In this document: positions 18,051 to 33,831 of the stretch, piece after piece
Layout of the letters: each line of letters opens with the position of its first letter
Position numbering within the stretch: position 1 is the first letter of the stretch
NCBI GenBank assembly: GCA_004764695.1
Contig: SMSO01000031.1
Coordinates: 720,436 to 784,435 of the forward strand
Direction: 5' to 3'
DNA: 64,000 nt
Origin: Schizochytrium sp. TIO01
Lineage: Eukaryota > Protista > Bigyra: Labyrinthulomycetes
Notes under the pieces: generated by a model
The model's database searches: none
The model's input: the letters and a program-made list of their open reading frames with translations, nothing else
What the model was told of the DNA's origin: nothing
Program-made: the position numbers and the translations under genes

Positions 18051-21000
18051 TCAGCATAGCCTTTCTAAAGCTTCCTGGCAGATTTTTGATGACGGAAATT
18101 CTTCATGTGCCTTCGAAACATACCAATTCGCACCCGCTTCCATGAGAATAAGAAAGACGTACCCATGAAAGGCAAGATTCTTCAATGCCTTACATGCGTT
18201 TTCTTGCACGCCTACATTCGTTGGATGTGCGCGCATGGCGGCCATAATCTCTGCACCCGCATTCAAATCTTCTCCCAAGATCTCTCTGTTGCGATCATTT
18301 ACAGCAAGACTGCCCAATGCCGCACATGCGTTTTCTTGCACGCCTACATTCGTTGGATGTGCGCGCATGGCGGCCATAATCTCTGCGCCCGCGTTTAAAT
18401 CTTCTCCCAAGATCTCTCTGTTGCGTCTTATACATGTAACAAGAATACACAATACCTCACATGCTTTTGCTTGTACACCTGCATTCGCTAGATGTTCGCG
18501 CATGGCGGCAACAATCTCTGCGCCCGCATTCAAATCTTGTCCCAGGATTTCTCTGTTGCGTTCGTTTAAAGCAAGAATCCGCAAGGTTTCACATGCTTGT
18601 TCTTGGACGTCCGCATTCGTTCGATGTTCACGCATGGCCGCCACAATCTCTGTGCCCACATTCAACTCTTGTTCTAATATCTCTCTGTCGCGGTCAGTCT
18701 GGGCAGCGAAATTCCCCAATGCTGCACATGCGTGTACTTGCACGTTTGCATTCGTTCGATGCTCGCGCATGGCGGCCACAATCCTTTTGATCATATACCG
18801 GGGTATTCTATCGATCTTTGAGAAGGGAAATTTAAAAGAAAGATTCCGCAATGCCTCACATGCTCTTTCTTGCACGCCTGCATTCGTTCGATGTTCGACC
18901 ATGGCGTCAACAATCGTTGCACTCGAATTTTCTGCGAATTCATAGCCCCAATCGTTAGATAAAGCAATATACGACGACAACGCCAGACATGCTTCTTCTT
19001 GCACGTTTGCATTCGTTCGGTGTATGCGCATGACGGCCACAATCTCTGCGCCCACATTCAAATCTTGTTCTAGGATCTCTCTGTTGCGGTCATCTAAAGC
19101 AAGATACATCAATGCCCAACATGCAATTATTTGTACGTCTGCATTCGTTCCATGTTCGCGCATGGCGGCCACAATCTCTACGCCCACATTCAAATCTTGT
19201 CCTAGGATCTCTCTGCTGCGTTCATGTTTAGCAAGATCGATCAATGCCTCAAACGCTCTTATTTGCATGTCCGCATTCGTTCGATTTGCGCGCATGGTGG
19301 TCACAATCTCTGCGCCCTGGATCTCTGCGTTGTTATACTTGATAGCCTTCATAACAAGAGAAAATGCCCCAAGCCTTTCTGCTTTCACTCCTGCATTCGT
19401 TAGATGTACGCGCATGGCGAGCACAATGTCTAAGCCCACATTCAGTTTATCTAACAGGCTCTCACAGTCGTGCTCGTTATTAGCGAGACTCCATAATGTC
19501 AAACAAGCGTACCTTTGAACGTCCGTATTCGTTGGATGTGCGCGCATAGCGGTCACAATCTCTGCGCCCACATTCAAATCTTGTCCCAGGATCTTTCTGT
19601 TGCGATCGTTGTCAGCAATATTCATTAATGTCCCACATGCACTTATTTGCACGTTTGCATTCGTTCCATGTTCGCGCATGGCAACCACAATCTCTGCGCC
19701 CGCATTCAAGTCTTGTCCCAGTCTCTCTTTGTTGCGATCGTCCTTGTAGGCAAGATTCATCAATGCGTCACATGCTTGTTTTTGCACGTCTACATTGCTT
19801 CGATTTGCGCGCATGGCGGCCACAATCTCTGCGCCCACCTTCAAATCTTGTCGCAGGACCTCTCTGTTGCGATCATCATTGTAGGCAAGATTACACACTG
19901 CCGCACATGCGTACTTTTGCACGTCGGCATTTGTTGGATGTGCGCGCATCGCGGCCGCAATCTCTATGCCCACATTCAGATCTTGTACCAGGATGTCTTG
20001 GTTGCGAGCGTTTACAGCAAGAATGCACAAGGCCACACATGCTTGTTCTTGCACATTTGCATTCATTCGAGGTGCGCGCATGGCAGCCACGATCTCTGCA
20101 CCCACATTCAGATCTTGTACCAGGATCTCTCTGTTGCGATCATTTTCAGCAAGATTGTTCAATGCCGCACATGCTTGTTCTTGTACGTTTGCATTCGTTC
20201 GATGTGCGCGCATGGCGGCCACAATCTCTGTGCCCACATTCAAATATTGTCCCAGGATCTCTCTGTTGCGATCAGTGAAAGCAAGATTCCGCAATGCCCC
20301 ACATGCTTGTTCTTGCACGTTTGCATTCGTTCGATGTACGCGCATGGCGGCCACAATCTCTGCGCCCAGATATAAATCGTGTGCTAGGACAATTGCGTTA
20401 TTTGTATTACTGTATGCGAGGCTCCTGACACAAGCACATGCTGCGGCCTGCACTGCTGTTTCGCTCGCATGCTCTTGCATGATACTTAACACTACAGGTC
20501 CTATACCATACCTTTCCATTGCTGCCTTAGTGTATTCACCGAAAGCTTCACGATGAAACGCGTAATGGAATATCCAAAGTGCTTCGGAAATCACCTCGGC
20601 ATCGCGTTGCTCTTCCTTTAGGATTCTATGCAAATGAACAAGAATACCCCGCTCACGAACAACTCTCCTCAGCTCATCATCGCCACCTACGGTCTCAGCA
20701 GCTTTGAATTCGCCTTCCAGAGCATCATGCAAGCTCTGTAGTGTTCGTAGCAGATCCGTTCTATCGCCTCGATCAGCCAGATCTCGAAGTAGACCCCGCA
20801 CCATTTCGACATTCACATTTCGTTTTGCAGATGTGCGATGGATTCTCTTTATAAATCCACCAGCAAGCCCGCGAATGATGCGGCTCGATCGGCGTTCACC
20901 ACCTCGAGACTCGAAACTCTTTAGAATATCCTTAGCAGTTGGTCTGTTAGCAGGCTCCTCGTCCCAACAAGACTTCATGATGCGGACTATCCAGTGTTTC

Positions 21001-22354
21001 ACAGGTACTTCGTCAGAGATTTCAGGACGCTCACCTGCGAGAACCCTGCTTTCAAGCTCTCCTGGATGATACACGAGATGCTCGTATGGCATCTCCTCGT
21101 GGTACATCTCCCACATAATCAGGCCTAGAGAATATATGTCTGCCTTTGTTGTCCAACGAGCAGGAGCTTGAAGTACTTCTGGAGCCATGTACACCCGGGT
21201 TCCGGCCACCGAAATGGTCTCTGCAAAACTTGTATTTGGGCTCGTTCTGTCTGCAAGACCAAAGTCGGTAAGCTTTACCAGGCCCAGGTCTTGGCTGAGG
21301 AGCACATTGGCAGGTTTCAGATCACCATGAATCACATTTTCACTATGCAGATAGCGGAGCCCTCGTGTGACACCGCGCAAAATGGCCTCTTTATCATCTA
21401 GTCCAAGGGTAATGCGTGTGCCGCTCGGTTCTGTCCTGTGCAGTAACTCATCTAGAGGGAAGTCGCACTTGTCCATAACCAAATGAAACCGGTTCTGAAT
21501 GATGCATGTGCCGAGAAGGCAGACGATGTTTTTGTGATTCAACCCTTGCCAGCTTTGGGCCTCTTCAATCAATGCCTTTTGCTCAGAAAGCTGAAGGTGG
21601 CCACGGATTTGTCGAACTCTCTTGATAGCAACTGGTATGTTTATTCCATCCTCTCCTTCGAGAACACCTGACAGGACTTGTCCAAAGCTGCCTTCACCAA
21701 GAATATGCTCGGGATAGTCTATGGTAACCTTTTCCAGTGGTATTGTAGCCATCTCAGACTCTTGAGTTTCTCGCACTGCACTAATAAGCTCTTGCAGCGC
21801 TCGTCGCTGTCTTCGCGTCCCAGCACGACCTGCTTATGATATCTGTAAGGTTGATGTCAGGATGGTCTTTGAGCAATAACAGTATGGCTTCAACTTGGTC
21901 GTGACCTTCGTCTTGGTATTGCTTGATCATGTTTTCAAGACGAAGGTGGTCTTCTTCGGCATCGTCGAGATCGATTTGCTCGATGGCTGCAGGCGGGGAC
22001 GGGAACTCGAAGCGGATTCGGCAAACTTGGATCAATGTTTGCAGACGCTGCTCTACATCTGCGAGCACTTGAGTAGCTCTCTTGGTGTCCATGAGTTGTA
22101 AAATTATGGTGGATCTATCATCACTAGGATCGAAGAACTCGCGAAGCAACGCGATGATGTTGCGCATATTTGCCTCAACTTGGAAAAAGTTGATCTTAGC
22201 ATGGTGGAGGGGTTTCCAGGAAACTGGCAAGCTTGGTGAAGACATTGTTGAGATGTGCAGCTCTTCGGCGACACGTGTCTGTATGCTCGAGAAGTGTCGC
22301 GGCCTCGCGGGCTAGCTGAAGCGAAGAAGTGAAGTTTGGCATAATGCTCGGCAT
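18051..22354 (-). CDS. Paralog 1: MLKL-like 4HB/brace + TKL protein kinase + ~17 ARM repeats; two +1 frameshifts in the N-terminal part (~22214, ~21835)
   Basis: Kinase motifs GEGSFGQV, VAIK, HGDLKPAN, DFG and APE are intact. Repeats of 44/45 aa, consensus NVGAEIVAAMRxHRTNAxVQxxACxALxNLA. The upstream ORF 21781-22245 and MPSIM start (22354) are collinear with paralogs 2 and 3. Confidence 0.8.
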
Positions 22355-33500: not shown

Positions 33501-33831
33501 GCGGATTCGGCAAACTTGGATCAATGTTTGCAGACGCTGCTCTACATCTGCGAGCACTTGAGTAGCTCTCTTGATGTAAAATTATGGTGGATCTATCATC
33601 ACTAGGATCGAAGAACTCGCGAAGTAGCGAGATGATGTTGCGTAGACTAGCCTCCACCTGAATGAAATCAATATCAGCATTTTGCTGGGGCTCTAAGAAA
33701 CTGGCAAGCTTGGTGAAGACATTGTTGAGATGTGCAGCTCTTCGGCGGCACGTGTGTGTATGCTCGAGAAGTGTCGCGGCCTCGCGGGCTAGCTGAAGCG
33801 AAGAAGTGAAGTTTGGCATAATATTCGCCAT
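30579..33831 (-). pseudogene. Paralog 3: MLKL-like 4HB/brace + kinase (HGDLEPAN) + ~9 ARM repeats; 11-nt deletion at ~33577 and an in-frame TAA at 32937-32939
   Basis: ORF pieces 33424-33831, 32937-33557 and 30579-32870. Same C-terminal cap as paralog 2 (GARECVSDAHQRFPSSSICQKAFAKLQ). Confidence 0.78.

What the first reader, a model, noticed from the sequence alone, without database searches (positions are those of the whole stretch)
18051..33831. Tandem family of MLKL-like 4HB-brace-kinase proteins fused to hypervariable ARM-repeat arrays: candidate protist sensor-executioner cell-death/immune receptors
Seen: three paralogs share one architecture once frameshifts are bridged: ~120-aa helical N-terminus, acidic linker, TKL kinase, then 9-24 ARM repeats. 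The N-terminus reads MPNFTSSLQLAREAATLLEHTHTCRRRAAHLNNVFTKLASFLEP...LADVEQRLQTLIQV, then IEQIDLDDAEEDHLRLENM..DQVEAILLLL..EMATIPREKV. By eye this aligns collinearly with human MLKL as I remember it ([81 protein letters not shown]), i.e. membrane-disrupting four-helix bundle, brace and kinase. Established: animal MLKL and plant MLKL-like/MCAfunc proteins use this 4HB as an executioner, and animal MLKL has no repeat sensor. Inference: here a variable ARM array acts as a built-in ligand sensor controlling a 4HB killer through the kinase, NLR-like in logic but without a STAND ATPase, possibly against viruses or non-self. I know of no description of this architecture in such protists.
Basis: partly seen in the sequence, partly recalled or inferred. 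Interest (0 to 1): 0.92.

Follow-up and report, generated by a model that had tools for sequence, protein, structure and literature searches.

The report
Broken MLKL-like kinase–armadillo receptor genes
Three side-by-side, recently duplicated but disabled copies of a gene family found only in thraustochytrid protists, whose intact members join a helical bundle predicted to resemble the membrane-breaking domain of the animal cell-death protein MLKL to a kinase-like switch and a variable armadillo-repeat array, a plausible but untested one-chain immune or cell-death receptor.

Summary
Three minus-strand paralogs (18051-22354, 23847-29101, 30579-33831) share a ~205-aa helical N-terminus, a RIPK/TKL-like kinase, and 18, 24 and 9 armadillo units of 44/45 aa.

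All three are broken. Each has frameshifts, and two share an in-frame TAA. I read them as recent pseudogenes.

The architecture itself is real. The same genome holds at least nine uninterrupted single-exon paralogs of 907-3024 aa. Outside this genome the family turned up only in Hondaea fermentalgiana.

The MLKL reading is partly supported, by fold only:
- A protein-language-model search also puts MLKL_N first.

Sequence tests fail: Pfam MLKL_N, a PDB profile search and hhalign against chytrid MLKL_N kinases gave nothing significant. A divergent member gave no language-model hit.

About half the family lack catalytic residues, as MLKL does. Repeat variability sits on one helix face.

The sensor-executioner mechanism is inference. 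Earlier notes of this scan flagged the same family elsewhere in this genome.

The parts
18051..22354 (-). Paralog g1: N-terminal helical domain, kinase (VAIK, HGDLKPAN and DFG present) and about 18 ARM units. It is disabled by two 1-base insertions.
   Evidence: ORFs and three-frame map, paralog DNA alignment, Pfam, repeat count, motif census.
22215..22215 (-). g1 lesion 1: one extra base relative to g2, g3 and the intact paralogs, shifting the frame inside helix 2/3 of the N-terminal domain. The position is approximate because the local alignment is diverged.
21835..21835 (-). g1 lesion 2: one extra base in the second brace region, just upstream of the kinase.
23847..29101 (-). Paralog g2: N-terminal domain, kinase (catalytic-loop HGDLE, DFG present) and about 24 ARM units. 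It is disabled by two frameshifts and one stop.
28486..29101 (-). g2 N-terminal helical domain (about 205 aa). Predicted helices are 6-23, 29-49, 56-74, 80-88 and 90-110 (bundle), then 124-147, 154-163, 169-173 and 180-202 (brace/linker). The acidic run DLDDAEEDH opens the first brace helix.
   Evidence: Model of the 94%-identical intact paralog L021, and structural matches to MLKL.
28750..28750 (-). g2 lesion 1: one extra base in a TTTCCC run, right after the fifth helix of the bundle.
28195..28197 (-). g2 lesion 2: an in-frame TAA in the kinase hinge/alpha-D region, identical to the one in g3.
26253..26253 (-). g2 lesion 3: one extra base inside the ARM array.
   Evidence: Alignment to a sister repeat.
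23850..27130 (-). g2 ARM array. Units of 44/45 aa are near-identical at the DNA level, with variability at unit positions 25, 26, 29, 32, 37 and 42.
   Evidence: Pfam Arm / ARM_LRRK2.
30579..33831 (-). Paralog g3: N-terminal domain, kinase (HGDLE, DFG) and about 9 ARM units. It is disabled by an 11-bp deletion and the shared TAA.
33574..33578 (-). g3 lesion 1: site of an 11-bp deletion in the N-terminal domain. Contigs of four public runs carry the 11 bases here, and run X1 holds both forms.
32937..32939 (-). g3 lesion 2: an in-frame TAA. Contigs of runs X2, X6 and X15 read a sense codon (GAA) here, while X1 reads TAA.

Best explanation
The window holds a tandem cluster of three recently duplicated, disabled copies (pseudogenes) of a multigene family. 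The organism is a thraustochytrid whose RPB3 is 81% identical to that of Hondaea fermentalgiana.

Intact family members are single-exon proteins of about 900-3000 aa with three modules:
1. A ~205-aa N-terminal domain predicted to fold like the MLKL executioner module: a four-helix bundle with a short top helix, followed by brace helices. A basic start of helix 2 (C-R-R-R) and invariant acidic residues in the first brace helix recall the MLKL 'electrostatic zipper'.
2. A RIPK/TKL-like kinase domain. It keeps catalytic residues in some members and has lost them in about half, so it more likely acts as a conformational switch than as an obligate enzyme.
3. An array of 9 to more than 38 armadillo units, nearly identical to one another except on one face of helix 3, the usual ligand-binding surface.

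Proposed mechanism (inferred, not shown): ligand binding to the ARM array changes the (pseudo)kinase conformation or oligomeric state. That frees the N-terminal bundle from its brace, and the bundle then attacks a membrane and kills or signals. The family turns over by tandem duplication, repeat gain and loss, and pseudogenisation, as immune-receptor families do.

Step odds:
- Window copies are truly broken: about 0.85.
- N-terminus has an MLKL-type fold: about 0.65.
- Sensor-switch-executioner function: about 0.35.
For: Architecture in uninterrupted ORFs:
- L021 (1309 aa), L022 (1304), L023 (1446), L024, L025, L026, L027 (3024) and L028.
- Kinase plus ARM by Pfam.

Fold:
- AF2 model pLDDT 83.5, pTM 0.80.
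- Foldseek: 8 of the first 11 PDB hits are MLKL N-terminal domains, probability 0.84-1.00, TM (target) 0.47-0.54, 16-24% identity, best E 0.016. Non-MLKL hits have probability of 0.35 or less.
- The helix pattern reappears in a second model built from a wider alignment.
- ESM Atlas features: the first cluster carries PF22215 MLKL_N (score 0.91, 173/256 features), followed by MCAfunc and RPW8 clusters.
- MLKL D139-R30 brace-to-helix-2 salt bridge: PMC7305203.

Pseudokinase drift:
- DFG Asp or the catalytic-loop Lys is lost in about half of members.

ARM array:
- Entropy peaks at unit positions 25, 26, 29 and 32 (i, i+1, i+4, i+7), plus 37 and 42.
- pN is 0.54 there against 0.14 elsewhere.

Birth and death:
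- At least 17 loci lie in several tandem clusters, and at least 6 are broken.
- g2 and g3 share the TAA, so a broken copy was duplicated.
- Related strains read a sense codon and carry the 11 bases.

Distribution:
- Only 11 cluster representatives matched among 1.84 billion proteins. All are kinase-ARM proteins, and all come from this genome or from Hondaea.
Against: - No significant sequence-level link to MLKL_N. Pfam found nothing on the window pieces. PF22215 found nothing in the whole genome in six frames. The best single-member hit was E 0.074, in 2 of 9 members. A PDB profile search returned no MLKL. hhalign against 14 chytrid MLKL_N-kinase N-termini gave probability 0.5%.
- Only one of the five AF2 models was confident (83.5, against 55-69), from a shallow alignment.
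- The divergent member P0009 gave no ESM hit.
- pN/pS at the variable codons is about 1.0, against 0.65 elsewhere. This is compatible with relaxed constraint in pseudogenes rather than diversifying selection.
- There is no expression, localisation, toxicity or ligand data.
- The three window genes cannot encode full-length protein.
Confidence: 0.5

Rival explanations
1. Ordinary signalling or scaffolding family. The N-terminus is a generic helical-bundle or coiled-coil regulatory or oligomerisation domain with no membrane activity. The proteins are lineage-expanded (pseudo)kinases that use ARM arrays to bind cellular partners, as Fused/ULK4, Cdc7/SepH-type or LRRK2-like ARM kinases do. The resemblance to MLKL is convergent helix packing.
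For: - No significant sequence or profile similarity to MLKL_N.
- ARM units match ARM_LRRK2 best.
- Kinase-ARM proteins exist in Mortierella.
- Window neighbours are housekeeping genes.
Against: - MLKL is the only natural family at the top in two aligners, and the only one aligned through the brace.
- An independent language-model search also names MLKL_N, MCAfunc and RPW8.
- The position before a frequently degenerate kinase copies the MLKL layout.
- Known ARM kinases carry the kinase at the extreme N-terminus and are conserved low-copy genes. They are not tandem arrays with near-identical hypervariable repeats and frequent pseudogenes.
Confidence: 0.3
2. The window genes are intact, and the apparent frameshifts and stop are assembly or consensus errors in a repeat-rich, paralog-rich region.
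For: - Four of the six lesions are single-base insertions. One sits in a TTTCCC run and one in a G run, the kind of error long-read assemblies make.
- Contigs of four public runs carry the 11 bases missing in g3, and three of them read a sense codon instead of TAA.
Against: - Over 31829-33892 the four runs show no single-base indel against the assembly, so base-level accuracy is good there.
- Run X1 reads TAA and holds a contig form without the 11 bases.
- An 11-bp deletion and a clustered substitution giving TAA, shared by g2 and g3, are not typical consensus errors.
- g2 and g3 also carry K-to-E in the catalytic loop.
- The g1 and g2 single-base lesions were not covered by the runs laid, so they remain unverified.
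Confidence: 0.1
3. Self/non-self (allorecognition) or developmental cell-death genes rather than anti-pathogen immunity. The molecular logic is the same, but the ARM arrays recognise polymorphic partners from other strains, as fungal HET/NLR-like loci with hypervariable repeats do.
For: - High internal repeat identity, with variation at a few surface positions.
- Lesions appear to differ between strains.
- The family is restricted to one small lineage.
Against: - Nothing here distinguishes this from immunity.
- No partner locus was identified.
- Cell fusion or allorecognition is, to my knowledge, not described in thraustochytrids.
Confidence: 0.1

Closest known systems
Animal MLKL (necroptosis executioner: 4HB, two-helix brace, pseudokinase)
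   Same: - Domain order: bundle, brace, then kinase-like domain.
- Basic start of helix 2 and acidic brace helix, as in the R30-D139 pair.
- Many family members have lost catalytic residues.
   Different: - No detectable sequence homology.
- Some members keep a complete catalytic set.
- A 400-2500-aa ARM array follows the kinase, where MLKL ends.
- No RIPK3/RHIM partner was identified.
- It is a multicopy tandem family, not a single gene.
Plant MLKLs and MLKL-type resistance proteins (AtMLKL1-3, wheat Pm13), MCAfunc and RPW8/CC-R domains
   Same: - HeLo/4HB-type N-terminus plus a kinase-like domain used in immunity.
- ESM feature search lists MCAfunc, RPW8 and MLKL_N plant clusters among the neighbours.
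   Different: - Plant MLKLs end in a short serine-rich region and have no repeat sensor.
- They are recognised by Pfam MLKL_N or MCAfunc, and the thraustochytrid domain is not.
Chytrid-fungus MLKL_N-kinase proteins (for example Cladochytrium tenue P0105, Zopfochytrium P0127)
   Same: Pfam-positive MLKL_N, then a linker, then a TKL-like kinase in a microbial eukaryote. The kinase is 28% identical to the family's.
   Different: - Profile-profile comparison of the N-termini is not significant.
- Pfam reported no ARM array in the one scanned here, P0105.
Fungal and plant NLR/STAND receptors with hypervariable repeat sensors (HET-E/NWD WD40, ANK and TPR arrays; CC-NLR resistosomes)
   Same: - Logic of an N-terminal death domain plus a C-terminal array of near-identical repeats, with variability at a few surface positions.
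- Tandem clusters, copy-number change and frequent pseudogenes. The fungal comparison rests on established knowledge, not on a test here.
   Different: No NB-ARC or NACHT ATPase is present. A (pseudo)kinase occupies the central switch position.
ARM-repeat kinases (LRRK2 ARM domain; Fused/ULK4; Cdc7/SepH/MAP3K-epsilon)
   Same: A kinase and ARM repeats in one chain. The best Pfam repeat model is ARM_LRRK2.
   Different: - Those have the kinase at the extreme N-terminus, or a ROC-COR core in LRRK2.
- They are conserved low-copy genes and lack the 205-aa helical bundle.
- They lack near-identical hypervariable units.

Membership tests
MLKL_N / MLKL executioner domain (Pfam PF22215) | Match to the family's sequence profile at or above the curated cut-off. 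| tested here: not met
   - No hit on the window pieces at E of 1 or less.
- PF22215 found nothing in the whole genome in six frames, though that search's controls also rang nowhere.
- Best per-member hit E 0.074, in 2 of 9 N-termini.
MLKL_N / MLKL executioner domain (Pfam PF22215) | Significant profile-profile similarity to bona fide members. | tested here: not met
   - hhalign of 16 thraustochytrid N-termini against 14 chytrid MLKL_N-kinase N-termini: probability 0.5%, E 0.13, although the aligned stretch is collinear.
- A1 against P0105 gave the same result.
- Both profiles are shallow (Neff below 4), and HHpred against animal and plant MLKL was not available.
MLKL_N / MLKL executioner domain (Pfam PF22215) | Four-helix bundle with a top helix, packed by a following brace helix, superposable on solved MLKL. 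| tested here: met
   - The test was on a predicted model (pLDDT 83.5).
- Foldseek probability 0.84-1.00, best E 0.016.
MLKL (whole protein) | The bundle and brace are followed directly by a kinase-like domain that need not be catalytic. | tested here: met
   - Continuous ORFs and alignment A2.
- DFG Asp or the catalytic-loop Lys is lost in about half of members.
MLKL (whole protein) | The isolated bundle permeabilises membranes or kills cells, and is released by activation of the kinase-like domain. | not testable with these tools
   Needs expression and liposome or toxicity assays.
Protein kinase superfamily, TKL/RIPK-like | Kinase fold with Gly loop, VAIK Lys, catalytic-loop Asp, DFG and APE. 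| tested here: met
   - Pfam Pkinase E 1.2e-47 on g1.
- g1 has GEGSFG, VAIK, HGDLKPAN, DFG and APE.
- The best natural PDB sequence match is RIPK1, E 1.5e-29.
- g2 and g3 carry HGDLE and are cut by a stop.
Armadillo repeat (PF00514; ARM_LRRK2 PF23744) | Tandem ~42-aa three-helix units matching the profile. | tested here: met
   - Arm E 1.6e-36 and ARM_LRRK2 E 1.7e-50 on g2.
- Regular 44/45-aa period.
NLR / STAND receptors | A central NB-ARC or NACHT P-loop ATPase. | tested here: not met
   No such Pfam domain in any piece or in relatives.
Fused/ULK4/Cdc7-type ARM kinases | Kinase domain at the extreme N-terminus of a conserved low-copy gene. | tested here: not met
   - About 205 aa (up to ~270) of helical domain precede the kinase.
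- At least 17 loci, many in tandem.

The most novel reading that the evidence does not exclude
Thraustochytrids possess an NLR-independent class of one-chain innate immune or cell-death receptors. In it, a hypervariable armadillo array senses a ligand, a (pseudo)kinase acts as the switch, and an MLKL-type four-helix bundle executes membrane damage. This would place a necroptosis-like executioner module with a built-in sensor in stramenopile protists. The family would evolve by tandem birth and death, and the three broken copies in this window would be its casualties.
Probability: 0.3. Interest if true: 0.85.

Novelty: new variant of a known kind. Interest (0 to 1): 0.68.

Why it matters
A survey of 67 protists found no homologues of necroptosis regulators and concluded that the pathway is likely exclusive to vertebrates (PMC7539657). 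MLKL/HeLo/RPW8-type bundles are known executioners in animals, plants and fungi. There they are triggered by a separate kinase (RIPK3) or by NLRs.

If the thraustochytrid N-terminus is such a bundle, three things follow:
- The executioner module reaches stramenopile protists.
- A new wiring would be on record, with sensor repeats, a (pseudo)kinase switch and a killer domain in a single chain and no STAND ATPase.
- An organism that is easy to culture would become a system for asking how such receptors diversify and how protists defend themselves. From my own knowledge, not tested here, some thraustochytrids are transformable and host viruses.

No paper in the searchable library combines MLKL-like proteins with armadillo arrays. 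The window itself adds the evolutionary side: recent duplication of already-broken copies, and lesions that appear to differ between strains.

Tried and rejected
- Pfam on every piece and on nine N-termini gave no family for the N-terminus. MLKL_N and DUF7792 appear only at E 0.05-0.07.
- A PDB sequence-profile search with the N-terminal alignment returned only noise, E above 0.6.
- PF22215 against the whole genome found nothing, and the controls rang nowhere, so this is weakly informative.
- hhalign against one chytrid MLKL_N kinase and against an alignment of 14 was not significant.
- ESM Atlas on the divergent member P0009, residues 38-240, gave no usable hit.
- The N-terminus-plus-kinase model was searched against the PDB to test an MLKL-like domain arrangement. 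The list was filled by FGFR and other kinases, so it was uninformative.
- Nei-Gojobori pN/pS on 44 repeat units gave about 1.0 at the variable codons and 0.65 elsewhere, so no claim of positive selection is made.
- I considered an 18-nt mini-intron (GT...AG) around the TAA. I rejected it because related contigs read a sense codon in frame there, and intact paralogs have no gap.
- I considered a reassigned stop codon and rejected it for the same reason.
- The plus-strand ORFs of 100-289 aa across the arrays are antisense reading frames kept open by the repeat. I do not take them for genes.
- Whether the public runs are RNA could not be settled, because the labels are guesses, so no expression claim is made.
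Intact paralogs were used by reference instead.

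
Full report
WHAT IS THERE

The window is G000:C30:720436-784435 of a 64-Mb, 37-contig genome. 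On the minus strand between 18051 and 33831 lie three tandem paralogs:
- g1: 18051-22354
- g2: 23847-29101
- g3: 30579-33831

Pfam places a protein kinase (Pkinase E 1.2e-47, PK_Tyr_Ser-Thr E 5e-46) and armadillo repeats (Arm to 1.6e-36, ARM_LRRK2 to 1.7e-50) in the pieces. It places nothing in the N-terminal 200 aa. Over the N-terminus plus kinase, DNA identity is 98.0% for g2-g3, 96.4% for g1-g2 and 95.7% for g1-g3. Flanking genes are ordinary: WD40, cytidylyltransferase, Alg9, CFAP46-like, RPB3 and JmjC.

ALL THREE COPIES ARE BROKEN

A paralog alignment, a three-frame map and a repeat alignment show these lesions:
- g1: one extra base near 22215 and one near 21835.
- g2: one extra base near 28750, an in-frame TAA at 28195-28197, and one extra base at 26253 inside the array.
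- g3: an 11-bp deletion at about 33574-33578 and the same TAA at 32937-32939.

g2 and g3 also read HGDLE instead of HGDLK in the catalytic loop. Because g2 and g3 share the TAA, a copy that was already broken was duplicated.

Contigs of four public runs were laid on 28100-33900:
- All four carry the 11 bases that g3 lacks. Run X1 holds both forms.
- Three runs (X2, X6, X15) read a sense codon (GAA) where the window has TAA. X1 reads TAA.
- Over 31829-33892 there is no other indel against the assembly. Base-level accuracy is therefore good there, and the lesions are probably real.

The contigs are about 98% identical to g3, so they may come from orthologues in other strains or from a paralog. 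The single-base lesions of g1 and g2 were not covered and remain unverified. Whether any run is RNA is only a guess by the tool. The contigs cover the gene body and not the intergenic DNA, which would fit transcripts but also strain differences. I make no expression claim.

THE ARCHITECTURE IS REAL IN INTACT PARALOGS

Searching the genome with the in-frame 117 aa of g2 found 20 matches. Fetching the regions gave uninterrupted single-exon ORFs:
- L021 855-4784(-), 1309 aa, 92-93% DNA identity to the window copies
- L022, 1304 aa
- L023, 1446 aa
- L024, 1305 aa
- L025, 1304 aa
- L026, 1381 aa
- L027, 3024 aa with at least 38 units
- L028, 907 aa

A further search with P0009 added C24:3405990-3410834 (1637-aa ORF). 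It also revealed more loci sharing the same repeat type. In all there are at least 17 N-terminus-kinase-ARM loci in several tandem clusters: C30:179-191 kb, 235-244 kb and 738-754 kb, and C33:2.45-2.47 Mb. At least six of them are broken.

DISTRIBUTION

A profile of nine N-termini was scored by HMMER against 1.84 billion cluster representatives. It found only 11 proteins, all kinase-ARM. Six are encoded by this genome. The rest are Hondaea fermentalgiana proteins annotated 'Protein kinase, putative'.

A word-indexed search of 5.8 billion proteins with residues 1-500 of L021 gave full-length coverage only for these same two sources. Everything else matched the kinase alone. RPB3 in the window is 81% identical to Hondaea's, so the organism is a thraustochytrid (Labyrinthulomycetes).

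IS THE N-TERMINUS MLKL-LIKE? EVIDENCE FOR

- AlphaFold2 on the nine-sequence alignment gave pLDDT 83.5 and pTM 0.80. It predicts helices 6-23, 29-49, 56-74, a short 80-88 and 90-110, then 124-147, 154-163, 169-173 and 180-202. The same helices recur in a second model from a 14-sequence alignment that includes the kinase.
- Foldseek against 350,542 PDB chains: 8 of the first 11 hits are human or mouse MLKL N-terminal domains, with probability 0.84-1.00, target-normalised TM 0.47-0.54, 16-24% identity and best E 0.016. Other hits have probability of 0.35 or less.
- ESM Atlas feature search: a cluster carrying PF22215 MLKL_N comes first (0.91, 173/256 features). MCAfunc, RPW8 and further MLKL_N clusters follow.
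- Mouse MLKL D139 in the first brace helix salt-bridges R30 of helix 2, as part of an electrostatic zipper (PMC7305203). The family has a conserved C-R-R-R at residues 28-31, opening helix 2, and invariant D131 and D135 in the first brace helix. I could not inspect contacts in the model, so this parallel is suggestive only.

IS THE N-TERMINUS MLKL-LIKE? EVIDENCE AGAINST

- No sequence method reaches significance: Pfam (best MLKL_N E 0.074), the PDB profile search and PF22215 on the genome.
- hhalign against a chytrid MLKL_N-kinase set that I assembled gave probability 0.5%, although the aligned stretch is collinear.
- Only one of the five AF2 models was confident.
- A divergent member gave no ESM hit.

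I put the odds of an MLKL-type fold at about 0.65. I do not file the domain as a member of Pfam MLKL_N.

THE KINASE

The best natural PDB sequence match is RIPK1 (E 1.5e-29), followed by TAK1 and receptor tyrosine kinases. This is consistent with a TKL-like kinase. Across 19 family members:
- Canonical HRD...K...N plus DFG occurs in only four.
- g1 is HGD/DFG, with a complete catalytic set.
- About half have lost the DFG Asp (NFG, GFG, NFE, NFS) and/or the catalytic-loop Lys.

A conserved kinase fold with dispensable catalytic residues is what MLKL itself shows. It suggests a switch or scaffold role.

THE ARM ARRAY

Forty-four units from the window were aligned. Most positions are nearly invariant. 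Entropy peaks at unit positions 25, 26, 29 and 32 (spacing i, i+1, i+4, i+7, one helix face), plus 37 and 42. By established knowledge of ARM proteins this is helix 3, the ligand-binding groove.

pN is 0.54 at those codons against 0.14 elsewhere. pN/pS is about 1.0 against 0.65. 'Hypervariable' is therefore confirmed descriptively, while positive selection is not shown. These copies are pseudogenes, so relaxed constraint contributes.

MECHANISM

The following is shown:
- The domain order.
- The predicted fold resemblance.
- Drift of the kinase motifs.
- Focused repeat variability.
- Tandem birth-and-death dynamics.

The following is inferred. The ARM array binds a ligand. The (pseudo)kinase relays this by conformational change or oligomerisation. 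The brace then releases the bundle, which damages a membrane. This is NLR-like logic without a STAND ATPase, since no NB-ARC or NACHT domain is present. I give it about 0.35.

The main rival (0.3) is a lineage-expanded signalling or scaffold kinase family whose N-terminus is a generic bundle. Allorecognition instead of anti-pathogen defence is a variant I cannot separate from the main reading. Assembly error as the cause of the lesions gets about 0.1.

COMPARISON AND NOVELTY

The closest known families are these:
- Animal MLKL has the same layout and predicted fold, but no sequence homology and no repeat sensor.
- Plant MLKLs, Pm13, MCAfunc and RPW8.
- Chytrid MLKL_N kinases are Pfam-positive, but Pfam reported no ARM array in the one scanned here.
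- Fungal and plant NLRs with hypervariable repeats share the logic but have a different switch.
- LRRK2 and Fused-type ARM kinases have repeats and a kinase but no bundle.

No paper in the library pairs MLKL-like proteins with armadillo arrays. None of the listed hits of a loose search pairing MLKL with thraustochytrid, labyrinthulomycete, oomycete or diatom terms mentions MLKL. A survey of 67 protists reported no necroptosis homologues (PMC7539657). I rate this a new variant of a known kind.

Earlier notes of this scan flagged the same family elsewhere in this genome. s1-835676 was followed up with the same reading, and s1-828314 covers the C30:~190 kb cluster. Those notes are not independent evidence.

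VERDICT

- The window copies are dead. The family remains interesting and is testable on its intact members.

Noticed in passing
Family-wide (L021-L029, P0004-P0013); window g2 about 28050-28080 and g3 about 32790-32820 for the HGDLE loop: About half of the family have lost the DFG aspartate (NFG, GFG, NFE or NFS) and/or the catalytic-loop lysine. Only four of 19 keep a fully canonical HRD/DFG set. The kinase fold is conserved but catalysis seems dispensable, as in MLKL.
   Followed up: partly
G000:C30:5209142-5215945, C35:1329379-1332525, C34:1337699-1342357, C31:3713530-3718758, C32:2402586-2405051, C13:6285157-6287577: Further very long ORFs (1260-2590 aa) carry the same ARM unit type. Some have a kinase, but none had an N-terminal match in my search. 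This suggests a wider superfamily of ARM-array genes in this genome.
   Followed up: no
L027 817-9891(-) = G000:C24:4430316-4439390: A 3024-aa family member with the same N-terminus and kinase and at least 38 ARM units, the longest array seen.
   Followed up: no
window 18235-20556, 24166-27259, 30726-31523 (+ strand): Many plus-strand ORFs of 100-289 aa lie antisense to the ARM arrays, with repetitive translations. They look like frames kept open by the repeat, not genes.
   Followed up: partly
window about 22355-22425, 29102-29166, 33832-33902 (- strand): A block of about 70 bp directly upstream of each start codon (ACCATCTTCTCAGAGCAA...CAGCACGGC) is nearly identical in all three copies. Sequence further upstream diverges, although g2 and g3 remain alignable for roughly 250 bp more. 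It is probably a duplicated 5'UTR or core promoter.
   Followed up: no
window 29264-30427: None of four public runs that hold the genes has any contig on the g2-g3 intergenic DNA. Coverage starts almost exactly at the g3 stop codon (30581). The runs may be transcriptomes, or the spacer may differ between strains.
   Followed up: no
P0012 (Hondaea fermentalgiana, 1042 aa): The public gene model joins a family member (N-terminus, kinase, one ARM hit) to three mitochondrial-carrier repeats and is named after the carrier. It is probably a merged annotation.
   Followed up: no
P0105, P0127-P0145 (chytrid fungi): About twenty chytrid proteins of 480-1400 aa match an N-terminal region that Pfam calls MLKL_N (PF22215) in six of them, followed by an apparently active TKL-like kinase. 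This is a little-described microbial MLKL-like group, useful as a comparison set.
   Followed up: partly
G000:C30:179637-179977 and 184935-185275 (L005/L019, L006/L020): Two further tandem copies share one identical frameshift near residue 95 of the N-terminal domain. This is another case of a broken copy being duplicated.
   Followed up: no
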